Position numbers and translations under genes: made by a program. Positions 13,301 through 62,669 of a DNA stretch of 64,000 nt are shown in pieces. The notes under the pieces were generated by a model. It saw only the letters and a program-made list of their open reading frames with translations, did not search any database and was not told the origin of the DNA. The stretch spans positions 62,001 to 126,000 of the IMG/VR virus record IMGVR_UViG_3300022935_000005; one strand, written 5' to 3'. Each line of letters starts with the position of its first letter. Within the stretch, counting starts at the first letter, position 1.

Positions 13301-16300
13301 ACTACAAACTTTATCAGACGGGACAGCCTACCTGACTGGAGCGGGTGGGATAGAAATTACCACCGCCTCCAATGGCCAAATAACAATTAGTGGCAGCGAA
13401 GGTCGTATTTACACTGCTGGTACAGGACTCGACTTAACAGTTAATGAATTTTCAATCGATAATTCGATAGTGGCCACGCTAACTGGGTCAGTGTTTAGTG
13501 GAGATGTTGTTTTCCAGTCGGGCCTTTCTGGATCTTTACAGACTTTAGCAGACGGAACGACAGCTTACCTAACTGGAGCAGGAGGCATAGAAATAACAAC
13601 TGCCTCTAATGGTCAAATCACGATCAGCGGTAGTGAAGGCAGAGTATACACTGCTGGTACGGGTCTGTTGTTATCTGGTGAAGAGTTCTCTATTGACAAC
13701 TCTGTTGTCGCTACCCTAACCGGGTCTGTATTCACCGGTGATGCTATCTTTCAGGCAGGATTATCCGGATCTTTGCAGACGCTTAGCGATGGTATAACTC
13801 CCTATATCGTCGGGACCGGAAGTATCAGCGTAACGACCTCATCATCGGGCCAGCTCGTTATATCATCTTCTGCTTCTGGTGGAGGTGGTTCAGGTGTAGA
13901 TACTGTTTCACAAGCAGGCGGAATTACTGTAAACAATGTGACGACGATGGTGTTTACCAGTAGTTGTTTAACTGACAATGGTGGCGGTCAAGTTACAGTT
14001 CAGCCTGTTATTGGTGCAGCAGAAGACGGCACATACACAGACGGTCTGTTCACAGACCTTGAGTACTGCACTCCGATCGGTACAGCAGTTGATAGATTTA
14101 ATGAGATATTACTGCAATTAGCACCATCACCAGCTCCAACTCTTACAACCGTAGATTGTAATGATAACGGCACAACGGCTTACCTATCATTTGGAGCTAG
14201 CTCTTCAACATCAGGATTTACGAACGTGGGTTCCTCTGCGGGTCTTGGCACCGCCGCGGACGTTAATGATCAGTACGGTGTGACAACTTCATCTGGCAAT
14301 TTTAGAAAAGGTATTTTTACAGCCGGAAGAACTTTCGATGGCACCCTCAATTATCACGTCACAGCCGCCGATTACGGGAATGGCAACGTAAATTATCCGG
14401 CTTACTCTTTTGGAGATGCTAACAAAGGTGAAATAGCTTTAGAAGTCAATGGTGTAATCATTCACACGGCTTCATTAACAGACACAACCGTGGGTTCAGG
14501 TGATCCAGGCTCAGGAACTTATACCACTGTTAACTCGAATGGGTCGGGTTTTACACAACTGTCGCAGACTGGTTCAGCCAAATTTAGTGACGGCTCGACG
14601 TTTACGTACTTTCAACACAGGACCGGAGAGTGGACGGTTGTTGACGGCGACCAGAGAGATGGGTGGAATTACGCTCGCGTCGTACAGATTGTCAATAACA
14701 TAACATCTTCTTTGACAAATTACGTCGAGTGGGTGAGAGACTCTAACACTGATCCTTTAACAGCCACGAATAATCAGATAACAGCCGTAGATGTCGGCGG
14801 ATTGAAAGAGTTATCAGGTGTTAAATACTTCAAATCTGGCAGTGTGGAATACAGGGTAGATGTAGAGAACGCGTATAGAACTGTGTATGACTTGAATGCG
14901 ATAACATTTAACACTACCAACCTGTCCATCAGCAGTCAAGCAAAGCCGACGATAGACACCTTATCAGGGGAGGACTCTTCAAAAGTACTCTCCATAACAG
15001 GAAGCTCAGTAATAACTGATCAGACTTTATTGAACGGCTCTGTCGCCGCCTCAATCAACGTTACTCATCCGTTAAAGTCAAATCTGTCTGCTGGCGGCGC
15101 AACAACAGCGTCTGGCTTCTTGTTGTATAATGTTACTGATAACTCCACAGCGACATCTGAGACCTTCCGAGGGGAGAGCTATAGGGTTCAATCGGCATCG
15201 TATGATCTACAATCAGATGTGACTGGTGGCTCTTTCGATTGGGATTCTTCCCTACATATGTCAGGCACTAACGCTGGTCATACTGACGGATTATTGTTCT
15301 ATGACGATGAGCTTGTGGCTCCAACAAACTCTTTGTTGAGCGGTGATTTTAGAAATAGTGTCGACCTGGGCTCCCTTGATTTTGCGCCGTCTGGAAATCC
15401 GGACTATACGGGCATAACTACTGGTACACGAACATTCTACAGAAAATATCAGAATACATCAGGTGGCACCGCCAATTCGTATGCACTAACTTTCTATGGA
15501 TCAGGTACGTCCATAGTCGGTGATTCAGGGACTTTAAACTCTTCTAACGTGAAAGTCTATGTTAAGCTTCCCGACAACAGTTCTGGTAATACAACTGGGT
15601 GGCTGGACCTGGCAACACTTTTCACATCTGGTACTTACACTGACGGGTCAGGTGCTCGGGTCTACAACTCTCCCGGGTCATTCACGACGACTGTGAGAGG
15701 TACGTTTGGCACACATGACATCGCGAACAACGATTTTATCGTCGCCAAAGTCTTAGCCGATGCTTCCTGGACAGGTAATATAAGCCAATTAGACATCTCG
15801 TTTGCGAACTCTAACGCAACACCAGCTTCCAATCTGGTTGACATATCTTCAGCAGATGACGGGATAGACGCGAAGTTAAGCTTTGGAACAACGAAGCCCG
15901 TAACAGATTTTACCAATGTAGGATCCTCCGCCGGCGTTGGCAGCGCGGCAAACACTAACGACGACTACCTAGACGGGACGCCGAATGCGAGGAGGCTTGG
16001 TATATTTGATCTTACTTCTGATATTGATGGTCCCATAAACACAGACTCTTCATCAGGAGGGTTCGCAGATGGTCACACAGGCATTCTTAAGTTAGAAGTT
16101 AATGGTTCGGAAATACCAGCTGCTCAAATAGATCTAGCTGCCTTTGCGGGCTCTGGATACCCTGGTTCTGGAGCGTCATCATCTGTTAATGGTAATGGTA
16201 CCGGGTTCACTAACGTCTCAACAGCACAACCACGTACAGGGTCAAACAATTATCCAGATTTTGACGAATGGTTTAGGACGGCCCGGTTTAATGTTGACGC

Positions 16301-17585
16301 AGCCGATCAAAGAAATGGCTGGAACTATGTCAGAGCAATTCACTCTGTAGGCGGCTCAGACAGAACGACGACATACGTTGAATGGGTGAACGACTTCTAT
16401 ACAACTAATATGTCATTCACCAATATCGGGTTTGATGACTTCGGTGGAGACACGGTCTTTTATCTATCTGGCGTTAAGTACTTCGATAATATAGCAGGGG
16501 ACGTCTCAGGTAGCTTGAAGGCTGAAGTTAGTGGGTCTCACTCCAATATCTACTCTAGAGCATCTAACGCTTTCTCAAGTTTAAGCTTAACGAACCTTAC
16601 AATAAACAGCATAGAGTTCGGCGGAATAGGGTATGTAAACACAACAGTGTCTAGCGATTCTACTGTGGCTCTTCCCGCTTTGGACACCGCGATATCAGAT
16701 GCACAATCACGTGATATGCATGTCACTGCTTCTTACAACTGTACGCTGACTAACTCTCTACCTGAAGATGCTGATTCTGTATCAACATTCTTTAGAGTAC
16801 TTCATCCTCAAAAGTCTACTTTAAATTCTCCTGTGCAAAGCAAGAGCACTTTCTTGATCTTCTCTGCTAGCGACTCCTCGACTGTAGATGACACAGAGAA
16901 CTTTTCTGGAGAGTACTACCGGCTGATATCTGGTTCATATGACCTGAAGGCAGACATTACAGATGTAGCAAACGTATGGGATTCGACAGCTAACATGAAC
17001 TCCGTCGCAGGACATGACAACGGTCTTTTAATATATGACGGAAAACTATATTCTCCGAAGGCTAAAGGAAATTCTGGTGATTTTGCCAATGTTGCAGAGG
17101 GCGGTTTGTATCAGGGTCCAGATGATAATGTTGACTATTCGACACTTTCTAACGGAAGAAGAGCATATTATAGAGCATTCAGAAATGATACTGCTTCGGA
17201 TCTGCCAGAGATGTTTGTGGAGATGACTGGAGATGCAGAGGTAATTCCAAGAAGCGGAGCCTTCGCCACAGGTTCGCTGGGTGCCAACAAGTATATCCAC
17301 GTCGATGTAAAGATACCCGGACAAACAGAGTGGCTTGACCTCGCAAAACCAGGTGATACGTCAAATGATGAAGACGGTGATGGTTGTCTCAAGGGAACGC
17401 TAGACCAAGTTATAGATTCCGGCGGAAATAGAAATAATTGTTCGTTCCAAGGAGCAACAGCTAATGGTACCGAAGGAAGTACACCTCCGGTGTCGAGACA
17501 GGATTACGTGATAATTAGAATTGTCGCGGATGAAGACTGGACAGGAAACATAGACTCTCTTAGTATAGACTGGAGCACTGCATAA
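10332..17585 (+). CDS. Giant repetitive tail fibre / receptor-binding-like protein
   Basis: 2417 aa, G/S/T-rich, with AGTGL-type fibre repeats, eight GLSGSLQTL modules and a duplicated ~550-aa C-terminal unit. Confidence 0.7.
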   Translation: MSQKNRTELRKKDFLVVRQTKNQNIAKVITPQTFQVGLDDAEFKNTLIVKGNAQVEGRLTDSAGNAFIKGSGNVTVTEDSSGGVTITAALSAGGALTGGTSGGITNFSYDGSGTATVALDLFTNTGLEIHPSYGLAINPTQATELSAIPASNDYLLIHDTSDTTNIRDVKKISVANLLAAAPAHSALTFSVSPRDGLSGASFDNQADANFDVNAGTGLAIVGGTSSGGAVFVDPSNASSAAIAAGDSVLFYDATASGTRKTTIQDIANFASSYSVSVGTGLTGTAYDGSGNSTFAIDTGVIPTLASSNTFSGTNTFSSTINANAGIQIAPGTPLLVAGTNVSLSTAPSGQVTISSTFAPGGSLTAGDGIKSFTYDGSSNTTVAVTADGLSSVGTPDRLDYVIIADSANPDSLTRSTVGSIADSVNRTSIVNAGQAININYANPISDPATFSVKFDNSTITLNSAGQLQASGVTTGPVGDPQATYLVLSTTSSLDNERVLTAGTGLQSTDAGANAAFTMAIDDSVVATLTGSQFSGNVGITGSLGVEGNALFATGLSGSLQTLADGSSYLREGNNITIVTGSDGSITISSTASGGGGGDSAAEYLVLSTTSSLDNERVLTAGTGIQTLDAGAGSTFTIGIDNSVVATLTGSVFSGDVVFQSGLSGSLQTLTDGTAYLTGAGGIEVTTASNGQITISGSEGRIYTAGTGLDLTANEFSVDNSVVATLTGSVFSGDAVFEAGLSGSLQTLTDGTAYITTIGGISITTASSGQLILSSAIGDITSVTAGNGLLGGGTDSDVTLEVDNSVIATLTGSVFTGDVIFQSGLSGSLQTLADGTAYLTGAGGIEISTSSNGQITISGSEGRIYTAGTGLDLTANEFSVDNSVVATLTGSVFTGDAVFQSGLSGSLQTLSDGTTAYITTIGGISITTASSGQLILSSAIGDITSVNAGNGLLGGGTDSDVTLQIDDSIVAALTGAVFSGDVIFQSGLSGSLQTLSDGTAYLTGAGGIEITTASNGQITISGSEGRIYTAGTGLDLTVNEFSIDNSIVATLTGSVFSGDVVFQSGLSGSLQTLADGTTAYLTGAGGIEITTASNGQITISGSEGRVYTAGTGLLLSGEEFSIDNSVVATLTGSVFTGDAIFQAGLSGSLQTLSDGITPYIVGTGSISVTTSSSGQLVISSSASGGGGSGVDTVSQAGGITVNNVTTMVFTSSCLTDNGGGQVTVQPVIGAAEDGTYTDGLFTDLEYCTPIGTAVDRFNEILLQLAPSPAPTLTTVDCNDNGTTAYLSFGASSSTSGFTNVGSSAGLGTAADVNDQYGVTTSSGNFRKGIFTAGRTFDGTLNYHVTAADYGNGNVNYPAYSFGDANKGEIALEVNGVIIHTASLTDTTVGSGDPGSGTYTTVNSNGSGFTQLSQTGSAKFSDGSTFTYFQHRTGEWTVVDGDQRDGWNYARVVQIVNNITSSLTNYVEWVRDSNTDPLTATNNQITAVDVGGLKELSGVKYFKSGSVEYRVDVENAYRTVYDLNAITFNTTNLSISSQAKPTIDTLSGEDSSKVLSITGSSVITDQTLLNGSVAASINVTHPLKSNLSAGGATTASGFLLYNVTDNSTATSETFRGESYRVQSASYDLQSDVTGGSFDWDSSLHMSGTNAGHTDGLLFYDDELVAPTNSLLSGDFRNSVDLGSLDFAPSGNPDYTGITTGTRTFYRKYQNTSGGTANSYALTFYGSGTSIVGDSGTLNSSNVKVYVKLPDNSSGNTTGWLDLATLFTSGTYTDGSGARVYNSPGSFTTTVRGTFGTHDIANNDFIVAKVLADASWTGNISQLDISFANSNATPASNLVDISSADDGIDAKLSFGTTKPVTDFTNVGSSAGVGSAANTNDDYLDGTPNARRLGIFDLTSDIDGPINTDSSSGGFADGHTGILKLEVNGSEIPAAQIDLAAFAGSGYPGSGASSSVNGNGTGFTNVSTAQPRTGSNNYPDFDEWFRTARFNVDAADQRNGWNYVRAIHSVGGSDRTTTYVEWVNDFYTTNMSFTNIGFDDFGGDTVFYLSGVKYFDNIAGDVSGSLKAEVSGSHSNIYSRASNAFSSLSLTNLTINSIEFGGIGYVNTTVSSDSTVALPALDTAISDAQSRDMHVTASYNCTLTNSLPEDADSVSTFFRVLHPQKSTLNSPVQSKSTFLIFSASDSSTVDDTENFSGEYYRLISGSYDLKADITDVANVWDSTANMNSVAGHDNGLLIYDGKLYSPKAKGNSGDFANVAEGGLYQGPDDNVDYSTLSNGRRAYYRAFRNDTASDLPEMFVEMTGDAEVIPRSGAFATGSLGANKYIHVDVKIPGQTEWLDLAKPGDTSNDEDGDGCLKGTLDQVIDSGGNRNNCSFQGATANGTEGSTPPVSRQDYVIIRIVADEDWTGNIDSLSIDWSTA
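11760..13870 (+). repeat. Intragenic tandem ~80-aa repeats (8 copies of D[ND]SVVATLTGSVF.GD..F..GLSGSLQTL.DG)
   Basis: Read directly from the translation. Two alternating linker types; DNA copies differ at synonymous sites. Confidence 0.9.
14130..17582 (+). repeat. Tandem duplication of a ~550-aa module (approx. 14130-15810 and 15820-17582)
   Basis: Collinear motifs in both copies: LSFG, FTNVGSSAG, LEVNG, DQR.GWNY, YVEWV, LSGVKYF, GH..GLL.YD, WLDLA, AD..WTGNI..L.I. Confidence 0.85.
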
Positions 17586-19623: not shown

Positions 19624-21030
19624 ATGTCTAGTACACAAATTAGATTACAACAACTTACCGGTTCACTTGCTTCTATTAAGTCCGGAGTGACCGGTGTTTC
19701 TACACAGGGTGCAGCAGCAGCATTCAATGCTGATGACCTTGAGGGTATCCTGAAGTACTACGCTCAGGCTCTTACCAACCTTCACGGTGCCGCTGAGTTC
19801 GGTAACCAGACAATCGGTAAGATTGCTCACGCTACCAACGACATCGTTCTTGAGTCACAAGGTAGCAGCCAGAAGATCTACCTTGACTCAAACTACCAAG
19901 TTCACCTTGCTGCTGCAGGTAGTGCTTCTGATTCGATGAAGATTGATTCTGAGCAGGGTGGTGTTGATATTGACGCCCTCTTGGGTGTTAACATTACTGC
20001 TGATTCTGTAGACTCCGACGCTATCCGTCTCAACGCCACTGCTGGTGGTATTGATATAGATTCTGCTGGAACCTTCTCACTCGTTTCTGCTAACACAACT
20101 GGTGGTAGCTCATCCGTCATCGACGGTGGTGCTTGGCTTGACCTTGAAGCTGATTACTCTGGTGGTGGTCGCATTAACATTGCTGCTAAGCAGTCGGGTG
20201 CTAGTGTTCACCTTAGCGTTAACTCACAAACCCACGCTCAATTCGACGAGAGCTTCTCGACCTTCGCTGTGGTTCCTGTAAAGGTCACAGACTCCTCAGC
20301 TGCTGCTGAATCCGATCAGGGTGCTCTTAGAGTTTCTGGCGGTGCTGGTATCGCCGGTGACCTCCACGTTGGATCAAGCCTCGTTGTTACCGGTTCAGCT
20401 ATGGAGATGGTCAACAGCGCTGCACAACTTCAGTTCGCTGAGGACATCGCGAGAGTCAAGATTGACGGTACCACAATGATTGTAGAGTCTGATGCGGCTC
20501 TCTTCTTGACTGGTACTGGTGGTGCTTCTGTTGTATCTGACCACGCTTCTATGGGTGTTGAGCTCAAGGCTACGCAGGCTGGCTTGTACCTCACCGGTGC
20601 ATCTGGTCTTCATGTCGAGACTGACAGCGGTGCTCACGGTGGTTACAACGGTGCTCTTGCGTTTGCAGCAGGAACCGACGGTGCTACTTTCGAGAGCAAC
20701 TTCCCTGGCTCGTCGCTCCTCGGCGCTATCAACGCTCTTAACGTTAGCTTGACAGGCACTCAGCCTACTCTCATGGAGAACAAGCTCAGTGCTGACGTTT
20801 CTGAGAGCGCTGGTTCTTGGCCAGTTGTCGTTGCTTACGTTGAGGGTGATAACACCACTCTTAGCGGTTGGAACTCGCTCAAGAAGAACGAGCTTGACGT
20901 TTACGTCAACGGTCAACTTCTGCGTTCTGGTTCTAGCGACGACTATGTTCTTAACACAACTACTGGTCAGATTGACTTCAAGTTCGCGATTCTCGCGGAC
21001 GACTTGGTTGTTGCAATCGAGCGTAAGTAA
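19624..21030 (+). CDS. Probably abundant virion structural protein (fibre/decoration-like)
   Basis: 468 aa with AAAGGA SD, its own promoter motif and terminator. Codon usage resembles the major capsid gene (GGT/GCT/CTT/AAC/TTC). C-terminal LDVYVNGQLL...DDY module. Confidence 0.65.
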   Translation: MSSTQIRLQQLTGSLASIKSGVTGVSTQGAAAAFNADDLEGILKYYAQALTNLHGAAEFGNQTIGKIAHATNDIVLESQGSSQKIYLDSNYQVHLAAAGSASDSMKIDSEQGGVDIDALLGVNITADSVDSDAIRLNATAGGIDIDSAGTFSLVSANTTGGSSSVIDGGAWLDLEADYSGGGRINIAAKQSGASVHLSVNSQTHAQFDESFSTFAVVPVKVTDSSAAAESDQGALRVSGGAGIAGDLHVGSSLVVTGSAMEMVNSAAQLQFAEDIARVKIDGTTMIVESDAALFLTGTGGASVVSDHASMGVELKATQAGLYLTGASGLHVETDSGAHGGYNGALAFAAGTDGATFESNFPGSSLLGAINALNVSLTGTQPTLMENKLSADVSESAGSWPVVVAYVEGDNTTLSGWNSLKKNELDVYVNGQLLRSGSSDDYVLNTTTGQIDFKFAILADDLVVAIERK

Positions 21031-49192: not shown

Positions 49193-51106
49193 ATGTCTAA
49201 GAAATTCACTTTAGAGACGCTTACCGAAGGAATTCGCCAGCGTCATCAGGGCGAGGCAAATGCTCGTCTTACTGAGAAGTGGTCTCGGACGGGTCTTCTG
49301 CGTGGTCTAGACGGCGTCCATCGTGAAAACATGGCAACGCTACTCGAGAACCAAGCAGGACAGGTCCTTCGTGAGTCCTCAACACTTGGCGGCGGTGGTC
49401 TCAACCCTGCTGCTGGCAGCGGAGACATCCGCGGCTTTACCAACATCGCTTTCCCAATCGTCCGTCGTGTATTCGGTGGTTTGGTTGCTAACGAGTTGGT
49501 TTCAATCCAGCCAATGAGCCTTCCTTCTGGTCTGCTCTTCTACCTTGACTACACTTACGGCACAAACGTCGGTGGTGAGGGTGACGGCATTGGTAGTTCG
49601 ACAAAGAACACCTACAGTAACAACCAGTCGATTTACAACAACCCGGCTGGTAAGGGTATCCGTTCTGGATCACTCGGCGTAGGTGGTCAGTACGACCTTG
49701 CTGGTAGCGGCTACAGCCGCGTTCACACCGGCTCGAACGTTACTACCCTCGCTGACGGGGTCACTACAAGCGTTTTCTGTCTTGGTGGTAGTGCTTCTCA
49801 AACCCGTGCTGTTATTACAGGCGGTGGTCTTGCCTCTTCCGGTTCTGACGGTCGCTTCCTGCAGTTTGATCCCCAGATCAGCCAGTTGATTGATGAAGAG
49901 AGCGGCGAGTTCTTCTTCATGACCGTCGACTTGGGCGCGCTTGGTGCTGACTTCGATGTAACAGCAGTCAAGGAAGCAGCGCTTGTTCTTTCTGGTACAA
50001 CTGGTCTTACTGCCGCTCTTAATGACATGCAGCCAATTCCGGAGACAGTCCAGGGTGGTGCTGGTGTCTACAACATTCGTCGTCTGAACCAGCTTGTTAG
50101 TTCAAGCTCATTCAAGGGCGAGATCTCACCTGCACCGATGGCATCAGCTCAACAAGCTGGCGCTGCTCTATTGCTGGTCTGTTCAGGCTCTGTCATGAAT
50201 GACACCGCTTCATTCATGTTAACGTACCCGAAGACAGCGACTCTCAACGCTGATGACGGTTCAACTCTCGTTGTTCCAACATTCGAGTCTGATTTCGGTT
50301 CCGGTACTCCTGGTTCACCTGTTCCAGAGATTCCCGAGATCGATATCAAGATCGAGAGTGTTTCGGTTGTTGCTCAGACTCGTAAGCTCCGCGCCCGCTG
50401 GTCACCAGAGCTCGCTCAGGACTTGAACGCTTACCACAGCCTTGACGCTGAGGTTGAGCTTACTCAGATCCTCTCCGAGCAGATTGCCCTTGAGATTGAC
50501 CGTGAGATCCTCAACGATCTTCTCATGCAGGCTGATACCAACTACTACTGGGACCGTCGTCCTGGTCGTTTCGTCAACAAGAAGACTGGTGCCGATCAGA
50601 CAAGCGCTGGCTCGCTCACTTCACCTGCCTTCACTGGTACGGTCCGTGAGTGGTACGAGACTCTTGTTGAGACCATCATCGACGTTGCTAACGAGATTCA
50701 CCGTAAGACCCTTCGTGGCTCGGCGAACTTCATCGTTGTTAGCCCTGATGTTGCCACGGTTCTTGAGGCAAGCGTTCTTTACCGTCCAAGCCTTAGCATT
50801 GACGGTGACGGACAGGTCGGTGCCATGTCACTTGGCGCTGAAGCAGTTGGTAGCTTGAGCAACCGTTTCACGGTCTACAAGGACCCCTACTTCCCACGCA
50901 ACAAGATTCTTGTTGGTTACAAGGGTGGTAGCTACCTTGAGACTGGTTACGTATACGCTCCTTACGTACCTCTCATCGTTACTCCGACGATCTTCGCACC
51001 TGAGGACTTCACCCCGCGTAAGGGTGTCATGACTCGCTACGGTAAGAAGATGGTCCGTAACGACTTCTACGGTACCGTTACCTGCCTCGGCATGGACGTT
51101 ATCTAA
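49193..51106 (+). CDS. gp23: Major capsid protein (T4 gp23-like)
   Basis: KWSRTGLL, PIVRRVF, VSIQPMSLPSGLLFYL, TRKLRARWSPELAQDLNAYH, EIDREI, YAPYVPL and GVMTRYG. Strong codon bias. Confidence 0.96.
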   Translation: MSKKFTLETLTEGIRQRHQGEANARLTEKWSRTGLLRGLDGVHRENMATLLENQAGQVLRESSTLGGGGLNPAAGSGDIRGFTNIAFPIVRRVFGGLVANELVSIQPMSLPSGLLFYLDYTYGTNVGGEGDGIGSSTKNTYSNNQSIYNNPAGKGIRSGSLGVGGQYDLAGSGYSRVHTGSNVTTLADGVTTSVFCLGGSASQTRAVITGGGLASSGSDGRFLQFDPQISQLIDEESGEFFFMTVDLGALGADFDVTAVKEAALVLSGTTGLTAALNDMQPIPETVQGGAGVYNIRRLNQLVSSSSFKGEISPAPMASAQQAGAALLLVCSGSVMNDTASFMLTYPKTATLNADDGSTLVVPTFESDFGSGTPGSPVPEIPEIDIKIESVSVVAQTRKLRARWSPELAQDLNAYHSLDAEVELTQILSEQIALEIDREILNDLLMQADTNYYWDRRPGRFVNKKTGADQTSAGSLTSPAFTGTVREWYETLVETIIDVANEIHRKTLRGSANFIVVSPDVATVLEASVLYRPSLSIDGDGQVGAMSLGAEAVGSLSNRFTVYKDPYFPRNKILVGYKGGSYLETGYVYAPYVPLIVTPTIFAPEDFTPRKGVMTRYGKKMVRNDFYGTVTCLGMDVI

Positions 51107-54783: not shown

Positions 54784-54814
54784 AAAGACATTTCGCTATC
54801 TCACAGAATAGTTA
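54784..54814 (+). promoter_or_regulatory. Extended promoter AAAGACATTTC-N11-GAATAGTTA (sheath 1)
   Basis: Same bipartite layout and spacing as 51576-51606. Confidence 0.6.
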
Positions 54815-54848
54815 TTTGTGATAGCTTAAGATCCAGGAGACCTGACTA

Positions 54849-57800
54849 ATGGCCGAACAAACATTTAGATCACCCGGTTTTTTCGAGAGAGAGATTGATG
54901 CATCTCAAAGACAGACAGAAATTGTGGGTGTTCCCGCAGGAGTAGTAGGTACCGCCGAGAAGGGTCCCGCTTTCGTTCCTGTTACAGTAGGAAGCACAGC
55001 AGATTTTGTTAACAAGTTTGGAACAGTAGATCCAGAAAGATTTGGACCGTACGCTGTAGATGCATTTCTTTCGAACAGAACTGCTTTGACATACGTTAGA
55101 GTACTGGGTGCTGGCGCGAATGAGACCGCCGCTGATATAACAAATACACAGAACACAGGGACCGTCTTAAACGCCGGGTTTAAAATTGAACCTATTATTT
55201 CTGATTCACCAATGAGTGCATCGGACAGTTCAGTCCAGTTCATCGTTGCGCGTCACGATGTATCCGCGTCAGCAGATTATTCGTTCCCGCAGTTTACAGA
55301 CAACCCTTCATTTGATCCAGGGAACACTGGCGACAAGGTTGACCTTGTTCGTGCTGTTGTTTTAACGGCATCAGGCTCACGCTTACAGGTTCTCGACATC
55401 GGAGAGACTTGGGGCAATGAGCTCGATCAAAACGCTGATCTAAAGAACGATTCAAGCCACGCTGCGAACCTTTGTTTTGCTCTGGCAATTTCGTCTTCGG
55501 CTGGTGCTGCTTTTACTAACGAATACCTTGATCAGGCTGGTGCGGGTGTTAAGATTGTTACTGCTTCGTTGAATCCGACACATCAATCATACATTACCAA
55601 TGTTCTGAATACTGACCCTCTGAAGTTCGCTGAAGAGAAGCACTTGCTATATCTCGACTTCGCGGTTGAAGATGAGTTGGCTTCTGTAGATGTTAACGCA
55701 GCACCAGCTGTAAGTGTCCTGTCAGGATCTAACAACGTGGTTACAACTGCTCTAACTGGCAATGCTGCCAAAGCTTTGAATGCGTTTGGTCGATTCGACA
55801 CAAGGTTTAGAACACCGAAATCACCTGCGATTATTTCACAGCCCTATGGAAAGAAAGAGCACGATTTGTTCCACTTCGAGACGCTTTCAGATGGTGAGTG
55901 GGGTAATGACAAAGTCAAGATCACCATAGCTAATATTAAGGCGTCGACAAACGACAACTACCCTTACCCAAGCTTCGAGGTTCAAGTACGTCGCTTTGAT
56001 GATTCCGATCTTGATCAGCAAGTCTTAGAGGCATTCCCAGGATGTGTCCTTGATCCAGACTCAGATAACTTTATCGGTAAGAAAGTCGGTGACTACAAGG
56101 CACGTTACAACTTCGACGCCACGAACGCGGCTGAAAAGAGAATCATCGTTACCGGTCGTTATCCAAACGTCTCAAATTTCGTGAGAGTTGTTCTTAACGA
56201 TGCAGTCTATAACAAGACCCTTCCAAGAGACGCATGTCCTTTCGGGTTCCGCGGCGTTCCGGTAATCAAGACTTCTGACGCGATGACAGATCGCCTCCAT
56301 ACAGGTCTCGAGCTCGACGGTATAACTTATGGTCAGGCAGGAGCGTCTCTTCAAAGGTTGTGGGGTGCTGATAAGTTAACCACTAGATACGCACTAACCG
56401 GTTCAATCGTTCCTCCGCTACCTCTTCGTTACAAGGTAACGCGTGGTGATGCAAAGGATGGCTGGTTCTCAGGTTTCCCTGGAGAGAAAGAGCTTGTTGA
56501 TAAGCGTCTCAACTGGGGTGTTAAGTACGAGCGTTGTCCAGAAACCGGAAGTATTGCAAACGCGAATCAGAACGTTAACGCTTCTAGCGTTCTCAACCCT
56601 CTAGTCCGTGCGTACTCTAAGTTCCAAGGGCTAGCAGAGATTGGCACTATTCTTACTGGCTCTGGCGCTGATGCCTTTAACGCTAACAAGTTTACTCTTG
56701 CTAGAGTGGTTCTTGCAGGTACTGGCTCTACCGCCTCGACGCTGCTAGACAACCTAACCGGATCCGCTCCAGAACATATGCTTGAAGCTGCGTACATCAG
56801 AAACGGTGTACCGGACTCCAAAGACTACACGATCATGGATCCGGATCTTTCTGATTACGGCAGAATTACTCTAGCGACTCTAATCCAGAGTTCATCAGTG
56901 AAGTTTAACCGCTTCACACCGTACACTGCTTTCAACATTCCAGTATTCGGTGGGTTTGACGGTGTTAATATCTTAGACAAAGATATGAGATACATGAACG
57001 ATAGAGCGGCATCGACAGATGATACCTCGAGCGTTGATGGTCAGATCGGAAAGGCCGCGTCTGGTTTCAGCGCTGGTACAATCGGTCTGAGGTCGAACCC
57101 AGGCGGTACTGGACGAAAGAACAACAGCATTGCTTCTTACAGAGAAGCCGCGACGATTATTACTGATCCCATGTCTACAAGGATTAACATCCTAGCAATT
57201 CCTGGAATCAGGGACTCATATGTCACGGATTGGGCCGCAGAGAGAACGAAGGACTACTCTATGGCTATATACCTCATGGATATTCCTGCGTGGTCTGAAG
57301 CCCAAGCACGTCTATTCCTCACTGAGGACCGCGAAGCTATCGCGTCTGCATCGATTGCGTGGCCTGATGTTAGAGAAACAGCTGAGCAGTTTGAGTCCAG
57401 AGTGTTTGATAATAACTACTCTGCGACGTACTTCCCAGATGTGTACATCACCGACAAGACCACTGGAAGCAGAGTAAGAGTTCCCGCTTCTGTGGCTGCT
57501 ATTGGAGCTTTGGCTTACAACGATTCAGTCGCATACCCGTGGTTCGCTCCGGCAGGTTTCAACAGAGGTGGCCTTGACCAAGTCAAGAACACAGACATTA
57601 GGTTGACGGCTGGTGATAGAGACACGCTATACGACGCAAGGATCAACCCGATTGCAAACTTTGCTGATGGTAGCTTCGTAATCTTCGGTCAAAAGACTTG
57701 CCAGCTCGCTCAAAGCGCGCTTGATAGAGTTAACGTCCGTCGAATGATGCTAGAGTTGAAGCGACAAGTTGTATCCGTTGCCGATAAGATTCTATTTGAG

Positions 57801-58037
57801 CCTAACACTCCTGCGACCAGAGCTCGTTTCGTTAATTCTGTTACACCGCTCCTGGCTACCATACAGTCTCAGCAGGGTATTGAGTCTTTTAGAGTCGTGA
57901 TGGATGATACCAACAATACTCAGGAAGACGTTGAGAACAACAGACTGAACGGTCGCATTGTTGTGGTGCCAACAAGGGCTATCGAATTTATTGCTATAGA
58001 TTTTGTCATTACAAACAGTGGCGTAGACTTCCAGTAG
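54849..58037 (+). CDS. gp18: Tail sheath protein 1 (gp18-like)
   Basis: FRSPGFFEREID, GTAEKGPAFVP, PWFAPAGFNRG, LYDARINPI, FGQKT, ALDRVNVRRM, FEPN and EFIAIDF. Confidence 0.93.
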   Translation: MAEQTFRSPGFFEREIDASQRQTEIVGVPAGVVGTAEKGPAFVPVTVGSTADFVNKFGTVDPERFGPYAVDAFLSNRTALTYVRVLGAGANETAADITNTQNTGTVLNAGFKIEPIISDSPMSASDSSVQFIVARHDVSASADYSFPQFTDNPSFDPGNTGDKVDLVRAVVLTASGSRLQVLDIGETWGNELDQNADLKNDSSHAANLCFALAISSSAGAAFTNEYLDQAGAGVKIVTASLNPTHQSYITNVLNTDPLKFAEEKHLLYLDFAVEDELASVDVNAAPAVSVLSGSNNVVTTALTGNAAKALNAFGRFDTRFRTPKSPAIISQPYGKKEHDLFHFETLSDGEWGNDKVKITIANIKASTNDNYPYPSFEVQVRRFDDSDLDQQVLEAFPGCVLDPDSDNFIGKKVGDYKARYNFDATNAAEKRIIVTGRYPNVSNFVRVVLNDAVYNKTLPRDACPFGFRGVPVIKTSDAMTDRLHTGLELDGITYGQAGASLQRLWGADKLTTRYALTGSIVPPLPLRYKVTRGDAKDGWFSGFPGEKELVDKRLNWGVKYERCPETGSIANANQNVNASSVLNPLVRAYSKFQGLAEIGTILTGSGADAFNANKFTLARVVLAGTGSTASTLLDNLTGSAPEHMLEAAYIRNGVPDSKDYTIMDPDLSDYGRITLATLIQSSSVKFNRFTPYTAFNIPVFGGFDGVNILDKDMRYMNDRAASTDDTSSVDGQIGKAASGFSAGTIGLRSNPGGTGRKNNSIASYREAATIITDPMSTRINILAIPGIRDSYVTDWAAERTKDYSMAIYLMDIPAWSEAQARLFLTEDREAIASASIAWPDVRETAEQFESRVFDNNYSATYFPDVYITDKTTGSRVRVPASVAAIGALAYNDSVAYPWFAPAGFNRGGLDQVKNTDIRLTAGDRDTLYDARINPIANFADGSFVIFGQKTCQLAQSALDRVNVRRMMLELKRQVVSVADKILFEPNTPATRARFVNSVTPLLATIQSQQGIESFRVVMDDTNNTQEDVENNRLNGRIVVVPTRAIEFIAIDFVITNSGVDFQ

Positions 58038-58038
58038 T

Positions 58039-58045
58039 ATAGTTA
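58039..58045 (+). promoter_or_regulatory. Putative late promoter ATAGTTA (sheath 2)
   Basis: Lies in a 34-nt intergenic gap. Confidence 0.55.
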
Positions 58046-58071
58046 AGAAATGAAACAGGAGATTATCAGAA

Positions 58072-61000
58072 ATGGCTGAACTTACCTTTAAAAGTCCGGG
58101 AGTGTCCACTAGAGAGATTGATCTTTCTGGCCCAACCCAAACGGGACCGAGTGGAATTCCTGCTGGTGTAATCGGAACCGCCAAGCAAGGTAGAGCATTT
58201 GTTCCGATCACTGTCGCAACATTTGCCGACTTCATCGCGGAGTTCGGAGATGTAGAGACAACGCTCTTCGCTCCGATGGCAATGAGACAGTGGTTAAGTT
58301 ATGCAAATGCTGGAACTTTCGTTCGAACCCTTGGTGCTGGTGACGGAAAGAAGAGAACCGCAACCGGCGCAGTAACAAACGCTGGGTTCGTTGTTGGGTC
58401 GCAAACTATCCAAACAAACGGTGCTATCGGAAAGAACGGTTATGCTGGATCGACTACAATAAACCCCGGAGCTCTTGGTAGGGCGCACTTCCTGGGTGTC
58501 ATTATGTCTCAATCAAATGGCTCCGATGTGTTCACAGATGCTGGACTTCAAGCTGTACAACCGATTCTCAGAGGTGTTCTCCTGGCACCCTCTGGTGTCA
58601 ACCTTGCGTTGAGCTCTTCAAGATACGAGACCACCAATAACCTTCCGCTGGGTGCACCCACTGCGAACAACTACGCTGCAAATTTCGCGTTCGGCACCGG
58701 CGCGGCCCAAGATGCTGGTTCAACGCTTGGTGCTGTTAACATCGGAGGTGGTCGCCAAGAGTTCGTGATTTTACAGAATGGTCACACTCACACTGACAGC
58801 TATCCAACTGTCATTACAGCGTCTTTTGATGTTGATGCTCCAAATTACTTTGGTAACATTCTAAACACTGATCCTACGAAGACAGAGCTAGCAGGTCACT
58901 GTCTGTATGCTCAATTCAACGTTCCTCCCGCGTTTGCGGTATGCTCAGGCTCATTGCGGATGGTCTCGACCTACAGTGCGTCTTTCGACGGTGTTAAAGA
59001 GGGTGTCACAATAAAGAACGAAGAGATTGCATTCCTCCTGACCGGTTCAGCAGGCAGAAACACAGGGACTACAACGAAGCCGAACTTTGAAGCCTTTACA
59101 GACAGGTTCCGGACTGCAAAGTTCCCGACTATAATTTCACAGGAATTCGGTGGTCAAAACAAAGACTTATTTACCGTTCACTGTCTTGATGATGGAGCGA
59201 TTGGTAACCACCGAGTTAAGATCTCTGTTGAGAACATTGTCAAGTCAACGAACGTAAACAATAAGTACGGCACGTTCGATCTGCTCGTTAGAGATTTCTA
59301 CGATACCGATGCTGAGCCGAAAGTTTTGGAGCGGTTTGTTAAGTTAAGCCTTGATCCTAATAACGAACGGTACATTGCTAGAGTGATTGGTGACTACAAT
59401 ATCTTCTACGATTTTGACAAGCGTGCTGGTGGCCAGAAGCTTGTTGTAGAAGGAAGTTATCCGAATGCTTCGAATTACGTCAGAGTATCTCCGTCAGTAG
59501 ACATGGAGCGTGGCACACTTCCTGCAACTGCTTTACCGGTAGGTTTCCGAGGAGTACCTCACTTGGTGACGTCTGGATCATCTATATTCGCAGATCCAAC
59601 TGCTTATGATGTCACAAGCGTTCTTGATGATGCTGAAGTCGCCGCGCAGCTGGTCCAGCCCCCGGTTCCGATGAGAAGAACTGTCGCTCAAGGTCTTGCG
59701 CCAAGAAAGAGAGTTAACTCATCCCTATACTGGGGTATCCAGCACGAGAAGCTGCAGAGTGTGGCACAGCCCAACTCTTCGACCACACTGGACGCCTCAA
59801 TCGATTCATACGGATTGTACTTCCCGACTTGGGACGTTGTGAACCAAGCAGCAATGGTTGGAGCTAATCCTGGCGTTGCTGATAATGATGGAACAATCTA
59901 CGATTGTGATAGATTCAATAACAACAAGTTCTCACTTGAGAAAATTCAGGTCATCACCAATTCTAGTGACGAAGCCGATGCTCAACAGTGGGCCGCTGCT
60001 ACCTACAGAAGGAAGGGTCTCGCTGAGGCGACAATGAATGACATTGATGGTAGTTCGTCGTCATCTACACGACTGCTTAGCGTAGAGAAAGACTTTGGTC
60101 TCTCGACTGCTCGTCCGTTCCTTAAGTTCACCATGATCGCTCAAGGTGGCTTCGACGGTCTAGACGTCTTCAATGAAGAAAGGGTCAAGATGACCTCTCC
60201 AGCCGTCAGAAGAGAAATGACATATGAGAACCAAGGTCTCATTGCTGGACCTACTGTGGCGGCTTACAGGAAGGCTCTAGATGTTATGGCTGAGAGATCA
60301 GACGTAGACATCCAGTTGTTGGCGATTCCAGGCATTCGTCACAGCGGAGTTACTGATTACGCGATCACAACCGTCGAGAATAGATTTGATGCAATGTACA
60401 TCATGGATATCGAGGTTGAAGACGTTCTTGGTAATATCGTCTCCGGGTCCGATCAAGATGTCAGTGTTACAAACACTGCAGCAACTTTCGCGGCAAGAAA
60501 TCTAGATTCAAGCTTCGCGGCTGCATACTTCCCCGATGTTGTAATGACAGATCAAACATCAGGTGCTGCTTCTTCTGCTCCACCAAGTGTAGCGGTTCTT
60601 GGGGCTTTCGGTCTAAATGACCAAGTTGCCTTCCCATGGTACGCCCCCGCCGGCTTCACCCGCGGCGCTCTGAAGAACGTAGTAGAGACACAGGTCAAGT
60701 TGAACAGAACAAATCTTGATACTCTCTACGAAGTAGACATCAACCCGATTACGTCGTTCCCACAATCACCAGAGGTTGTCGTGTTCGGACAAAAGACTCT
60801 TCTAGCCGCCCAAAGTGCTCTAGACAGAGTTAACGTACGACGACTCTTGATTGATATCCGTCGGCAAGTTAGAAAGATTGGCGATACATTCTTGTTCGAG
60901 CCAAACAGGGAGTCCACGCTGGCAAGGTTCTCAGCAGCGGTTACTCCGGTCTTAACTAGAATTCAACAGCAACAAGGCCTTGAGCGGTTCAAGGTTCAGA

Positions 61001-61134
61001 TCGATACCACAACGACTACTCAAGCTGATATCGAAAACAACACTGTAAGAGGTAAGATCTTCTTGCAGCCAGTACGTTCTGTCGAGTTTATCTCACTCGA
61101 CTTTGTTGTAACGAACGCTGGTTTGGACATATAA
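58072..61134 (+). CDS. gp18: Tail sheath protein 2 (gp18-like paralog)
   Basis: FKSPGVSTREID, PWYAPAGFTRG, INPI, FGQKT, ALDRVNVRRL, FEPN and EFISLDF. Confidence 0.93.
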   Translation: MAELTFKSPGVSTREIDLSGPTQTGPSGIPAGVIGTAKQGRAFVPITVATFADFIAEFGDVETTLFAPMAMRQWLSYANAGTFVRTLGAGDGKKRTATGAVTNAGFVVGSQTIQTNGAIGKNGYAGSTTINPGALGRAHFLGVIMSQSNGSDVFTDAGLQAVQPILRGVLLAPSGVNLALSSSRYETTNNLPLGAPTANNYAANFAFGTGAAQDAGSTLGAVNIGGGRQEFVILQNGHTHTDSYPTVITASFDVDAPNYFGNILNTDPTKTELAGHCLYAQFNVPPAFAVCSGSLRMVSTYSASFDGVKEGVTIKNEEIAFLLTGSAGRNTGTTTKPNFEAFTDRFRTAKFPTIISQEFGGQNKDLFTVHCLDDGAIGNHRVKISVENIVKSTNVNNKYGTFDLLVRDFYDTDAEPKVLERFVKLSLDPNNERYIARVIGDYNIFYDFDKRAGGQKLVVEGSYPNASNYVRVSPSVDMERGTLPATALPVGFRGVPHLVTSGSSIFADPTAYDVTSVLDDAEVAAQLVQPPVPMRRTVAQGLAPRKRVNSSLYWGIQHEKLQSVAQPNSSTTLDASIDSYGLYFPTWDVVNQAAMVGANPGVADNDGTIYDCDRFNNNKFSLEKIQVITNSSDEADAQQWAAATYRRKGLAEATMNDIDGSSSSSTRLLSVEKDFGLSTARPFLKFTMIAQGGFDGLDVFNEERVKMTSPAVRREMTYENQGLIAGPTVAAYRKALDVMAERSDVDIQLLAIPGIRHSGVTDYAITTVENRFDAMYIMDIEVEDVLGNIVSGSDQDVSVTNTAATFAARNLDSSFAAAYFPDVVMTDQTSGAASSAPPSVAVLGAFGLNDQVAFPWYAPAGFTRGALKNVVETQVKLNRTNLDTLYEVDINPITSFPQSPEVVVFGQKTLLAAQSALDRVNVRRLLIDIRRQVRKIGDTFLFEPNRESTLARFSAAVTPVLTRIQQQQGLERFKVQIDTTTTTQADIENNTVRGKIFLQPVRSVEFISLDFVVTNAGLDI

Positions 61135-61146
61135 TCTGAGAACGAT

Positions 61147-61153
61147 ATAGTTA
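61147..61153 (+). promoter_or_regulatory. Putative late promoter ATAGTTA (tail tube)
   Basis: Lies in a 41-nt intergenic gap. Confidence 0.55.
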
Positions 61154-61175
61154 GTAATAACAAGGAGTAACAAAG

Positions 61176-61664
61176 ATGCCAGAGACACTATCAGTTACCG
61201 ACATGCTGCCGAACAAGTTTGAGCCGAAAAGAAAGTTTCGGTGGGTGTTCGCTATTGAGGGTATTGACGCATTTCTTATTAAGACGGCTGCCCGTCCTAC
61301 CATGAACACTGCCGAGATCGAAATTCCATATATGAACGGTCAAAGGTATATCGCTGGTAAGACGAAGTTTGACGCAGTTTCAGTGACCCTTCACGATCCA
61401 ATCGCTCCGTCAGGTGCGCAACAAGTTATGGAATGGGTCCGTACTCATTACGAATCTGTTTCTGGACGTGGTGGTTACGCGGATTTCTACAAGAGAGATT
61501 GTCAGCTTAAGCTTCTTGACCCTGTCGGGACAGTCGTAGAGCTTTGGGACATGAAGGGTTGTTTCCTAACGTCTGCCGGTTTTGGTGACTTGGATTACGG
61601 CTCAGAAGATCCTGCAGAAATCGCTCTTACGATCCGTTTCGATAACTGCGTCCTTCAGTACTAA
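61176..61664 (+). CDS. gp19: Tail tube protein (gp19-like)
   Basis: FEPKRKFRW, AARP, YIAGK, VMEW, YKRD...LLDP.G.VVE.W...G.F and LDY; follows the sheath genes. Confidence 0.9.
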   Translation: MPETLSVTDMLPNKFEPKRKFRWVFAIEGIDAFLIKTAARPTMNTAEIEIPYMNGQRYIAGKTKFDAVSVTLHDPIAPSGAQQVMEWVRTHYESVSGRGGYADFYKRDCQLKLLDPVGTVVELWDMKGCFLTSAGFGDLDYGSEDPAEIALTIRFDNCVLQY

Positions 61665-61829: not shown

Positions 61830-62669
61830 ATGTCAAACGAAAATGAAAGAAGCGAAATCTTTGGTTCCATGAAGGAACATATGCCTACCCATAACGTCAT
61901 GAGAGACGATTTTGGGTTTGAAGTCCCCGTTGAGACCGTTCCGCTCCCGTCTGGCGGTAAGTGCTATGACCAAGATCATCCGCTTCACGGAAAAGAGACG
62001 GTTGAGATTAGAGCAATGACTGCTAGAGAAGAGGATATTCTCACCTCAAAGGCGCTGATTAAGAAAGGTACTGTGATTAGCCATCTGATTAAGTCATGTA
62101 TGATCGACAAAAGAGTTGATCCTGACACACTTTTGGCAGGTGACAGAAACGCTTTGATGGTTGCGCTTAGAGTGACGGGCTACGGCGCAGAGTATAAGGT
62201 GGAAGTTGATTGCCCTGCGTGCAGCGAGAGATCAAAACATTCCTTCAATTTAGGTGAGCTGCCTATTAAGACTCTTGATCTAGATCCTATTGCTGAAGGT
62301 CAAAATGTTTTCGAGACTACGCTACCAGTTACTAAGGCTAAGATTAGGTTCAAGCTTCTAACAGGTCACGATGAGCAGGAGATTATGACGATCTCCGAAC
62401 GTCGTAAGAAACAAGGTCAAAGAGCAGAGAATCTTGTTACACAACGTTTAAAGTACGCCATTGTTTCAGCAAACGGTATTAATGATAAGACAAAGCTCGA
62501 TATGATGGTTAATAACCTCCCAGCTCGTGATTCGTTATTCTTGCGGAAGTTTATCGACAACAACGAGCCTGGCATTGAGATGAAGTCCTGGATGGATTGT
62601 CCTTCATGCCTTGAACATTCGGAGGTGAGGCTGCCTTTAGGCGCCGCGTTTTTTTGGCCTGACGAGTGA
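61830..62669 (+). CDS. Baseplate hub/tail assembly chaperone (T4 gp26-like)
   Basis: VPLPSGGKCY, IRAMTAREEDIL, GDRNALMVALR, CPAC...CPSC, ending FFWP. Lies between tube and tape measure genes. Confidence 0.8.
   Translation: MSNENERSEIFGSMKEHMPTHNVMRDDFGFEVPVETVPLPSGGKCYDQDHPLHGKETVEIRAMTAREEDILTSKALIKKGTVISHLIKSCMIDKRVDPDTLLAGDRNALMVALRVTGYGAEYKVEVDCPACSERSKHSFNLGELPIKTLDLDPIAEGQNVFETTLPVTKAKIRFKLLTGHDEQEIMTISERRKKQGQRAENLVTQRLKYAIVSANGINDKTKLDMMVNNLPARDSLFLRKFIDNNEPGIEMKSWMDCPSCLEHSEVRLPLGAAFFWPDE

What the first reader, a model, noticed from the sequence alone, without database searches (positions are those of the whole stretch)
54849..61134. Two full-length, divergent ~1000-aa tail sheath paralogs in tandem with a single tube gene
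Both genes are intact, carry all conserved sheath motifs, have their own promoter motif and SD, and contain large divergent central insertions; T4 gp18 is ~660 aa and single. Multiple sheath proteins are known from extracellular contractile injection systems (Afp/PVC) but are unusual in phages. Inference: a heteropolymeric sheath with alternating or position-specific rings, or alternative tails.
Basis: partly seen in the sequence, partly recalled or inferred. Interest (0 to 1): 0.65.

Follow-up and report, generated by a model that had tools for sequence, protein, structure and literature searches.

The report
Two-paralog tail sheath in marine jumbo phages
A 281-kb uncultured phage carries two intact, anciently duplicated ~1000-residue tail-sheath genes in tandem before its single tube gene, and the same arrangement (sometimes with three sheath genes) is kept across a whole lineage of environmental jumbo phages, so the tail sheath is most likely built from more than one protein, as already known for Pseudomonas phage PaBG and for PVC/Afp injection systems.

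Summary
ORFs 54849-58037 (A, 1062 aa) and 58072-61134 (B, 1020 aa) are intact. Both are sheath proteins by PHROG, Pfam and predicted fold (Z 23-32 to T4-type sheaths). They are colinear and 34% identical, and the genome's only tube gene follows at 61176-61664.

It is neither an assembly artefact nor a recent copy.
- Identical copies occur in at least five independent assemblies.
- All 34 informative related IMG/VR contigs keep A followed by a B-type gene.
- A and B form two 100/100-supported clades that are sisters (100/98) to the exclusion of single-sheath relatives.
- dN/dS is about 0.07-0.10 for both.
- One sub-lineage has a third paralog (A-B'-B-tube).

Each gene has a strong AGGAG ribosome-binding site and an ATAnTTA motif, which is enriched in intergenic DNA (P about 4e-14).

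PaBG has a published two-component sheath, and my tree shows that duplication arose independently. A 484-kb uncultured phage also carries two sheath genes.

The most likely mechanism is one heteropolymeric sheath around one tube, with paralog-specific outer domains. Virion presence, stoichiometry and lattice order remain untested. I rate it an independent, lineage-wide variant of a known kind, of moderate interest.

The parts
54808..54814 (+). ATAGTTA, a late-promoter-like motif 41 nt upstream of sheath A
   Evidence: The motif class ATAnTTA is concentrated in intergenic spacers (14 of 28 hits in 3.3% of the DNA, P 4e-14). An equivalent motif sits in the same spacer of relatives. Promoter function is inferred.
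54835..54839 (+). AGGAG Shine-Dalgarno of sheath A
   Evidence: Read directly from the sequence. Conserved in relatives.
54849..58037 (+). Sheath paralog A (P0001, 1062 aa)
   Evidence: phrog_23 E 2e-67 and PF17482 at 38.5 bits. AF2 model pLDDT 86.1. Fold match to the T4-like KP1 sheath, Z 23.3, and to T4 gp18M, Z 18.7 at rmsd 3.1. Member of the A clade, support 100/100.
58038..58045 (+). TATAGTTA late-promoter-like motif in the 34-nt A-B spacer
   Evidence: ATAGTTA, ATACTTA or a related form is present in the A-B spacer of most of the two-gene relatives examined.
58057..58061 (+). AGGAG Shine-Dalgarno of sheath B
   Evidence: Conserved in relatives.
58072..61134 (+). Sheath paralog B (P0002, 1020 aa)
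   Evidence: phrog_23 E 5e-57 and PF17482 at 38.1 bits. AF2 model pLDDT 80.1. Fold match to the KP1 sheath, Z 32.2 at rmsd 3.4 over 434 residues, and to T4 gp18, Z 28. Member of the B clade, support 100/100.
61146..61153 (+). TATAGTTA late-promoter-like motif upstream of the tube gene
61163..61167 (+). AGGAG Shine-Dalgarno of the tube gene
61176..61664 (+). Tail tube protein (P0003, 162 aa), the only tube gene found in the genome
   Evidence: phrog_4542 E 4e-30. Pfam T4 gp19 at 22.5 bits, below its 28.2 cut-off. One match only in the 281-kb record.
61830..62669 (+). Baseplate-hub-like protein (context)
   Evidence: phrog_150 E 8e-21.
49193..51106 (+). T4 gp23-type major capsid protein (context: shows this is a phage virion module, not an eCIS)
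   Evidence: phrog_138 E 3e-73. Nearest isolates are Microcystis phage Mel-JY01 and Flavobacterium phage immuto.

Best explanation
A and B are products of one ancient tandem duplication of a T4-type sheath gene at the base of a widespread lineage of uncultured jumbo phages found in environmental metagenomes.

Both are made late in infection, together with the single tube protein. Each gene has its own ATAnTTA promoter-like motif and a strong AGGAG site, and no terminator separates them.

Both polymerise around the same tube into one contractile sheath made of two kinds of subunit. The core that builds the lattice is kept similar enough for both to enter one mesh: the N-terminal arm with the SPG motif, the C-terminal domain and the C-terminal strand. 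The roughly 590 extra residues that lie outside the T4-like core have diverged, so the sheath surface carries two different sets of outer domains.

Residues fixed differently in A and B cluster in the last 45 residues. This suggests that the two subunits occupy defined, non-equivalent lattice positions, for example alternating hexameric layers as with Pvc2 and Pvc3 in PlPVC1. There the paralog with an extra knob docks the folded fibres.

Shown: gene integrity, sheath fold, one old duplication, purifying selection on both copies, conserved linkage and signals, and a single tube gene. Inferred: presence of both proteins in the virion, co-polymerisation, and the ordered arrangement.
For: Sheath identity and fold of both proteins.

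One duplication older than the lineage: A clade 100/100, B clade 100/100, and A+B 100/98 apart from the single-sheath phages.

Linkage: 34 of 34 informative related contigs keep A directly followed by a B-type gene. A tube gene lies downstream wherever the contig reaches far enough.

Purifying selection on both: dN/dS is 0.070 (A), 0.099 (B) and 0.079 (tube) for the L014/L015 pair. For window/L012, pN is 0.15 and 0.13 against pS of about 0.8.

Only one tube gene in the genome.

A and B share the same length and are colinear. Identity is highest in the N arm (62% over residues 1-39) and the C-terminal 225 residues (41-55%).

Of 17 sites fixed differently in A and B, F11V lies in the N arm and five lie in the last 45 residues.

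Codon usage relative to capsid plus tube is similar: 0.515 and 0.499, ranks 32 and 30 of 36.

Each gene has its own promoter-like motif and AGGAG site. No terminator-like signal exceeds chance.

In three-gene relatives the A stop overlaps the B' start (TAATG), which implies coupled translation.

Precedents: both PaBG sheath proteins are listed among the bands of its structural proteome (PMC7412058, Table 1). PlPVC1 has alternating Pvc2 and Pvc3 layers (PMC12546770).
Against: There are no proteomic, transcript or imaging data for this phage.

The conserved arms are conserved in all sheath proteins, so their similarity does not prove cross-compatibility.

Codon usage and Shine-Dalgarno strength are weak proxies for protein abundance.

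The models are monomers, and I could not obtain coordinates to map the paralog-specific sites onto interfaces.
Confidence: 0.55

Rival explanations
1. One paralog forms the bulk of the sheath. The other is a position-specific ring, either a baseplate-proximal initiator or a neck-proximal terminal layer, like Pvc4 or Afp4 in eCIS. It would be present at about 6-12 copies.
For: In PlPVC1 a dedicated sheath paralog, Pvc4, initiates the sheath (PMC12546770). Fixed paralog-specific residues in the C-terminal region would also fit a specialised interface with the baseplate or neck.
Against: A and B have the same length, the same full set of outer domains, equally strong AGGAG sites, their own promoter-like motifs and similar codon usage. 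Coupled translation of A and B' in relatives points to comparable amounts. A 6-copy adaptor would not be expected to keep about 590 residues of surface domains under dN/dS of about 0.1.
Confidence: 0.2
2. One paralog has left the sheath lattice and taken on another role. Examples would be an outer decoration layer, hairs along the tail, or a non-virion polymer.
For: PaBG-group phages, the known two-sheath phages, belong to a lineage described as 'hairy' myoviruses (PMC7909554). The outer domains are strongly diverged. A relative (L042) has a further 1125-aa ORF with only weak similarity to the sheath centre.
Against: Both paralogs keep the N-terminal SPG arm and the complete C-terminal domain, with 41-62% identity. 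Both models match solved sheath subunits over the whole core (Z 23-32).
Confidence: 0.1
3. Alternative tails: each paralog forms a homopolymeric sheath on a different sub-population of particles, for example for different hosts or conditions.
For: Each gene has its own promoter-like motif. The outer domains differ.
Against: Only one tube gene was found in the genome. The two genes are never found apart in 34 of 34 relatives. They are 34 nt apart with no terminator and no sign of a switch. In some relatives a pair of sheath genes is translationally coupled.
Confidence: 0.08
4. Assembly artefact, or one copy is a decaying pseudogene.
For: None found. One contig with otherwise identical sequence (L007) has B ending early, at 913 aa.
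Against: The arrangement is identical in at least five independent assemblies (L006, L007, L009, L011, L038) and is conserved at 40-81% identity in many others. Both frames are open. dN/dS is about 0.07-0.10.
Confidence: 0.01

Closest known systems
Two-component tail sheath of Pseudomonas jumbo phage PaBG and its group (gp76 + gp213; Kurochkina et al. 2018, Virology 515:46; PMC7412058)
   Same: It is a jumbo myovirus with two full-length paralogous sheath proteins of about equal size, 38-42% identical, that arose by gene duplication. Both are listed among the bands of the structural proteome (PMC7412058, Table 1).
   Different: The duplication is independent: the PaBG pair forms its own 100/100 clade outside the A+B clade. 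The PaBG genes are about 120 kb apart on opposite strands, whereas here they are tandem. The PaBG proteins are 528 and 547 aa, against about 1000 aa here. The virion module here is T4 gp23/gp19-like.
eCIS sheaths with three paralogs (Pvc2/Pvc3/Pvc4 of PlPVC1; Afp2/Afp3/Afp4)
   Same: These have several tandem sheath paralogs around one tube. Pvc2 and Pvc3 alternate layer by layer, and the paralog with an extra outer knob docks the fibres (PMC12546770). This is the best-documented model for how a mixed sheath lattice works. The three-gene relatives (A-B'-B) mirror the three-paralog layout.
   Different: Those are tailocin-like particles of bacteria without a capsid, and their subunits are 350-450 aa. 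Here the genes sit in a phage virion module next to the major capsid gene. Profile similarity is limited to the common C-terminal domain (E 1e-7 to 1e-9).
T4 gp18 and the T4-like Klebsiella phage KP1 sheath
   Same: These are the closest solved structures. The profile E-value to gp18 residues 459-651 is 4.6e-42. Fold matches reach Z 23-32 over about 420-434 residues. The tube gene lies directly downstream.
   Different: These phages have a single sheath gene of about 655 aa. Here there are two genes, each with about 590 extra residues.
Uncultured huge phage LR756508.1 (484 kb)
   Same: It has two 824-aa sheath ORFs about 1 kb apart that are 29% identical. Its capsid is T4-like and related to the window's.
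   Different: Its two copies fall outside the A+B clade and do not group as orthologs of A and B. It is therefore probably a further separate duplication. One copy sits on a very long branch, so its placement is unsure.
Microcystis phage Mel-JY01 (PP395634), the nearest cultured relative
   Same: The gene order of capsid, sheath and tube is the same. Its sheath and capsid are the best isolate hits.
   Different: It has one sheath gene of 812 aa.

Membership tests
Contractile-tail sheath protein (T4 gp18-like; Pfam PF17482 / PF04984, PHROG 23) | C-terminal sheath domain (PF17482) above the curated cut-off | tested here: met
   A scores 38.5 bits and B 38.1 bits against a cut-off of 26.9. The profile against T4 gp18 residues 459-651 gives E 4.6e-42.
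Contractile-tail sheath protein (T4 gp18-like; Pfam PF17482 / PF04984, PHROG 23) | Subtilisin-like sheath domain (PF04984) above the curated cut-off | tested here: inconclusive
   A scores 30.0 and B 26.1 bits against a cut-off of 31.4. Precomputed Pfam calls list PF04984 for the database entry identical to A (P0004) and for many A orthologs. VIA hits to subtilisin folds over residues 26-947 reach Z of about 8.
Contractile-tail sheath protein (T4 gp18-like; Pfam PF17482 / PF04984, PHROG 23) | Whole-core fold match to solved sheath subunits | tested here: met
   A: 9ev2_S1, Z 23.3 over 419 residues, and 3foa, Z 18.7 at rmsd 3.1. B: 9f4a_SA, Z 32.2 at rmsd 3.4 over 434 residues, and 3j2m, Z 28.
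Contractile-tail sheath protein (T4 gp18-like; Pfam PF17482 / PF04984, PHROG 23) | N-terminal and C-terminal extension arms used for the inter-subunit handshake | tested here: met
   Both proteins start with MAE.TF.SPG. Their first 23-27 residues are disordered in the monomer models, and both end in the conserved EFI..DF strand. That these arms actually exchange strands is inferred from solved sheaths.
Contractile-tail sheath protein (T4 gp18-like; Pfam PF17482 / PF04984, PHROG 23) | Tube gene adjacent, within a virion module | tested here: met
   The tube gene is at 61176-61664, a baseplate-hub-like gene at 61830, and the capsid gene at 49193.
Contractile-tail sheath protein (T4 gp18-like; Pfam PF17482 / PF04984, PHROG 23) | Polymerises on the tube and contracts | not testable with these tools
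   This needs virions or recombinant polysheaths.
Phage two-component (multi-paralog) tail sheath, PaBG type | Two full-length paralogous sheath genes in one phage genome | tested here: met
Phage two-component (multi-paralog) tail sheath, PaBG type | Both proteins present in the virion sheath | not testable with these tools
Phage two-component (multi-paralog) tail sheath, PaBG type | Descent from the same duplication as PaBG gp76/gp213 | tested here: not met
   The PaBG pair forms a separate 100/100 clade, and A+B forms its own clade at 100/98. The trait is the same kind but of independent origin.
Extracellular contractile injection system (Afp/PVC) | Sheath paralogs within a capsid-less bacterial eCIS locus | tested here: not met
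   The genes lie 3.7 kb downstream of a T4-type major capsid gene, in a 281-kb virus record estimated 92% complete.

The most novel reading that the evidence does not exclude
A cosmopolitan lineage of uncultured 240-300-kb phages in environmental metagenomes builds its contractile tail from an ordered heteropolymer of two (in one sub-lineage three) ~1000-residue sheath paralogs. For example, hexameric layers could alternate, which would double the axial repeat and give two distinct surface arrays for docking fibres or tail decorations. Such a design would have evolved independently at least three times in jumbo phages: in this lineage, in the PaBG group and in LR756508.
Probability: 0.35. Interest if true: 0.6.

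Novelty: new variant of a known kind. Interest (0 to 1): 0.5.

Why it matters
Nearly all structural work on phage sheaths assumes one subunit type. A mixed lattice changes the helical repeat, how contraction spreads along the tail, and what the tail surface can bind.

This is not a one-off. The trait is conserved by purifying selection across a large lineage with no cultured member in the phage collection searched. At least 1782 database proteins reach E of 1e-10 or better, on contigs up to 302 kb. The lineage also shows a further expansion to three paralogs.

Because the duplication is independent of PaBG's, the two lineages give a natural comparison for asking why jumbo phages repeatedly split their sheath gene. 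The finding also gives annotation pipelines a reason not to collapse or discard a 'second' sheath gene.

Tried and rejected
- Near-identity DNA search of the phage collection found nothing. No cultured member of the lineage is in that collection.
No reads were laid, so there is no expression or coverage evidence.
- Complex prediction was not used. Only one job is allowed. A pass for A with B would not separate a hetero-lattice from a homo-lattice, because the paralog cores are about 50% identical and the tool's controls are unrelated proteins.
- The search of protein representatives was not used. The word search and family scans had already settled the family.
- Sigma-70 promoter and intrinsic terminator scans gave counts at chance level.
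- The exact motif TATAGTTA, and ATAGYTA, are not over-represented by count alone. Only their position in intergenic spacers is significant.
- Model coordinates are not exposed to scripts. I could not cut out the outer domains, superpose A on B, or map paralog-specific residues.
- dS is saturated for the window/L012 pair, so dN/dS is quoted from the L014/L015 pair instead.
- PHROG and Pfam scans of the large upstream ORFs returned nothing.
Full report
WHAT IS THERE

The window is bases 62001-126000 of a 280,913-bp IMG/VR virus record that CheckV estimates to be 92% complete. At the stated coordinates there are two open frames on the + strand: A at 54849-58037 (1062 aa, P0001) and B at 58072-61134 (1020 aa, P0002). 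A 162-aa frame follows at 61176-61664 (P0003).

Both large proteins hit PHROG 23 'tail sheath' (E 2e-67 and 5e-57). Both hit Pfam Phage_sheath_1C above its cut-off. Pfam Phage_sheath_1 falls just under its cut-off in both. The small protein is a T4 gp19-type tube (phrog_4542, E 4e-30).

A and B align from first to last residue at 34% identity (E 7e-169). The genome contains these two sheath genes and no others, and it contains one tube gene.

The neighbourhood is a virion module. A T4 gp23-type capsid gene lies at 49193-51106, an adaptor-like gene at 51622, and a baseplate-hub-like gene at 61830.

STRUCTURE

AlphaFold models built on ortholog alignments are confident: A has pLDDT 86.1 and pTM 0.81, and B has pLDDT 80.1 and pTM 0.83. 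Only the N-terminal 23-27 residues and a few loops are disordered. That is expected for the arm which inserts into a neighbouring subunit.

- A matches the T4-like Klebsiella phage KP1 sheath at Z 23.3 over 419 residues, and T4 gp18M at Z 18.7 with rmsd 3.1.
- B matches the KP1 sheath at Z 32.2 with rmsd 3.4 over 434 residues, and T4 gp18 at Z 28.
- A profile of A orthologs finds T4 gp18 residues 459-651 at E 4.6e-42.

About 430 residues of each protein therefore form a T4-type sheath subunit, and about 590 are extra.

The two paralogs are colinear. Identity is 45-62% in residues 1-80, 38-45% in 300-499 and 41-55% in 838-1062. It drops to 5-26% in A residues 120-240, 500-757 and 798-837.

NOT AN ARTEFACT, NOT RECENT

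A scan of IMG/VR returned 46 related loci. Copies identical to the window occur in at least five independent assemblies.

In every locus that extends past the end of an A gene, or upstream of a B gene, the partner is present: 34 of 34. A orthologs are 45-77% identical to the window's A, and B orthologs 40-81% identical to the window's B. A tube gene lies downstream wherever the contig reaches far enough.

More distant contigs (L043-L049) and the nearest isolate, Microcystis phage Mel-JY01, have one sheath gene (633-812 aa) followed directly by the tube.

A maximum-likelihood tree was built from 44 proteins and 957 columns under LG+G4, with ultrafast bootstrap and SH-aLRT support.
- The A clade has 100/100 support.
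- The B clade has 100/100 support.
- A+B together have 100/98 support, to the exclusion of all single-copy relatives.

So one duplication predates the radiation of the lineage.

A sub-lineage (L034, L022, L019, L017) has three genes, A-B'-B-tube. B' is nested inside B as sister to L034_B (100/99), so this is a second duplication.

Both copies are under purifying selection. dN/dS is 0.070 (A), 0.099 (B) and 0.079 (tube) for the L014/L015 pair. For window against L012, pN is 0.15 and 0.13 against saturated pS of about 0.8.

A word search of 5.8 billion proteins found at least 1782 relatives at E of 1e-10 or better. Nearly all are unnamed. Sources include Tara Oceans marine samples, and contigs reach 302 kb.

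EXPRESSION SIGNALS

ATAGTTA lies 41, 33 and 29 nt before the start codons of A, B and the tube gene. AGGAG lies 8-10 nt before each start.

By count alone the motif is not enriched. By position it is: 14 of 28 plus-strand ATAnTTA hits fall in the 3.3% of the window that is intergenic (binomial P 4e-14). Thirteen genes have one within 60 nt upstream.

The same class of motif (ATAGTTA, ATACTTA, ATAATTA, ATATTTA), together with AGGAG, is present in the corresponding spacers of most of the divergent relatives examined. It resembles the T4 late promoter TATAAATA; that comparison rests on my own knowledge, and promoter function is inferred.

No terminator-like site above chance separates A, B and the tube gene.

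In the three-gene relatives the A stop overlaps the B' start (TAATG), which implies coupled translation.

Codon usage scored against capsid plus tube is similar for A (0.515) and B (0.499). Both rank among the highest in the window.

PRECEDENTS

- Pseudomonas phage PaBG has a published 'unique two-component tail sheath' (Kurochkina 2018, cited in PMC7412058). Its gp76 and gp213 are 38% identical, both are listed among the bands of the structural proteome, and they are attributed to a duplication in the PaBG/Lu11 group.
- I located both PaBG genes about 120 kb apart on opposite strands. In my tree they form their own clade, so that duplication is independent of this one.
- The uncultured 484-kb phage LR756508.1 also has two 824-aa sheath ORFs, 29% identical. 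These fall outside the A+B clade.
- In the PlPVC1 injection system the sheath begins with Pvc4 and continues as alternating Pvc2 and Pvc3 layers. Pvc3's extra knob is thought to dock the folded fibres (PMC12546770).

MECHANISM

The best-supported reading is one sheath made of both proteins around the single tube. Five observations support it:
1. Linkage is strict over long evolutionary time.
2. The two proteins have equal size and architecture.
3. Their expression signals and codon usage are comparable.
4. Translation is coupled in the three-gene relatives.
5. Similarity is highest exactly in the parts that build the lattice.

Seventeen positions are fixed differently in the A and B clades. 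One is F11V in the N-terminal arm. Five lie in the last 45 residues: M1018I, N1022T, N1023T, N1034R and V1040Q. This fits subunits that occupy non-equivalent lattice positions, such as alternating layers, with diverged outer domains giving two surface arrays.

All of this beyond gene-level facts is inference.

Rivals, with my estimated confidence:
- A low-copy ring at the baseplate or neck (0.2).
- A paralog that has left the lattice (0.1).
- Alternative tails (0.08).
- Artefact or pseudogene (0.01).

LIMITS

- No read, transcript or proteome evidence could be obtained.
- The complex predictor was not used, because a single job cannot compare homo- with hetero-assemblies.

VERDICT

This is an independent, lineage-wide and expandable variant of a known kind, the multi-paralog sheath, and is of moderate interest.

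Noticed in passing
window 19624-21030 (+): This 468-aa ORF has the highest codon-usage similarity to the capsid and tube genes in the window (0.727, equal to the capsid gene itself). It has no PHROG or Pfam hit and no similarity to the capsid protein. It is probably a very abundant, unrecognised virion protein.
   Followed up: partly
window 3678-10307 and 10332-17585 (+): Two giant ORFs of 2209 and 2417 aa lie upstream of the virion module. Neither has any PHROG or Pfam match.
   Followed up: partly
window-wide, e.g. 21123, 30561, 41898, 47603, 51600, 54808, 58039, 61147, 62907, 63208: ATAnTTA lies 12-57 nt upstream of 13 gene starts, and half of all plus-strand hits are in the 3.3% of the DNA that is intergenic. 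It is a candidate late-promoter element for this lineage and is conserved in relatives.
   Followed up: partly
L034 776-10809; also L017, L019, L022, and L028 (third ORF 11594-13405): Relatives with three sheath paralogs in a row (A-B'-B-tube). A and B' overlap by TAATG. In L028, B is 1413 aa long and is followed by a third, weakly sheath-like ORF.
   Followed up: partly
L042 5023-8400: A 1125-aa ORF lies between the tube gene and a 281-aa ORF at 8456-9301 that I take, by its position only, to be the counterpart of the window's hub-like gene. It has only weak BLAST similarity to the central part of the sheath proteins and no PHROG hit. It may be a much-diverged sheath-derived protein.
   Followed up: partly
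L030 14117-16837 (same in L037): A 2.7-kb insert separates sheath B from the tube gene and carries an HNH-endonuclease-like ORF on the opposite strand (phrog_559, E 7.5e-7). It is probably a mobile element.
   Followed up: partly
L007 3420-6161: In a contig whose sheath A, tube and the aligned part of B are identical to the window's, sheath B ends early at 913 aa. This is either a frameshift or nonsense variant, or an assembly error.
   Followed up: no
L002 (LR756508.1) 7536-10010, 11025-13499, 13611-15380: This 484-kb uncultured phage has its own pair of 824-aa sheath paralogs (29% identical), about 1 kb apart. A homing-endonuclease ORF follows them (phrog_3339, E 8e-102).
   Followed up: partly
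protein P0075 (homolog of A, 55% identity): NCBI labels this protein as coming from a 'Halobacteriovorax sp.' metagenome-assembled genome. It is either a mis-binned phage contig or a hint about the host.
   Followed up: no
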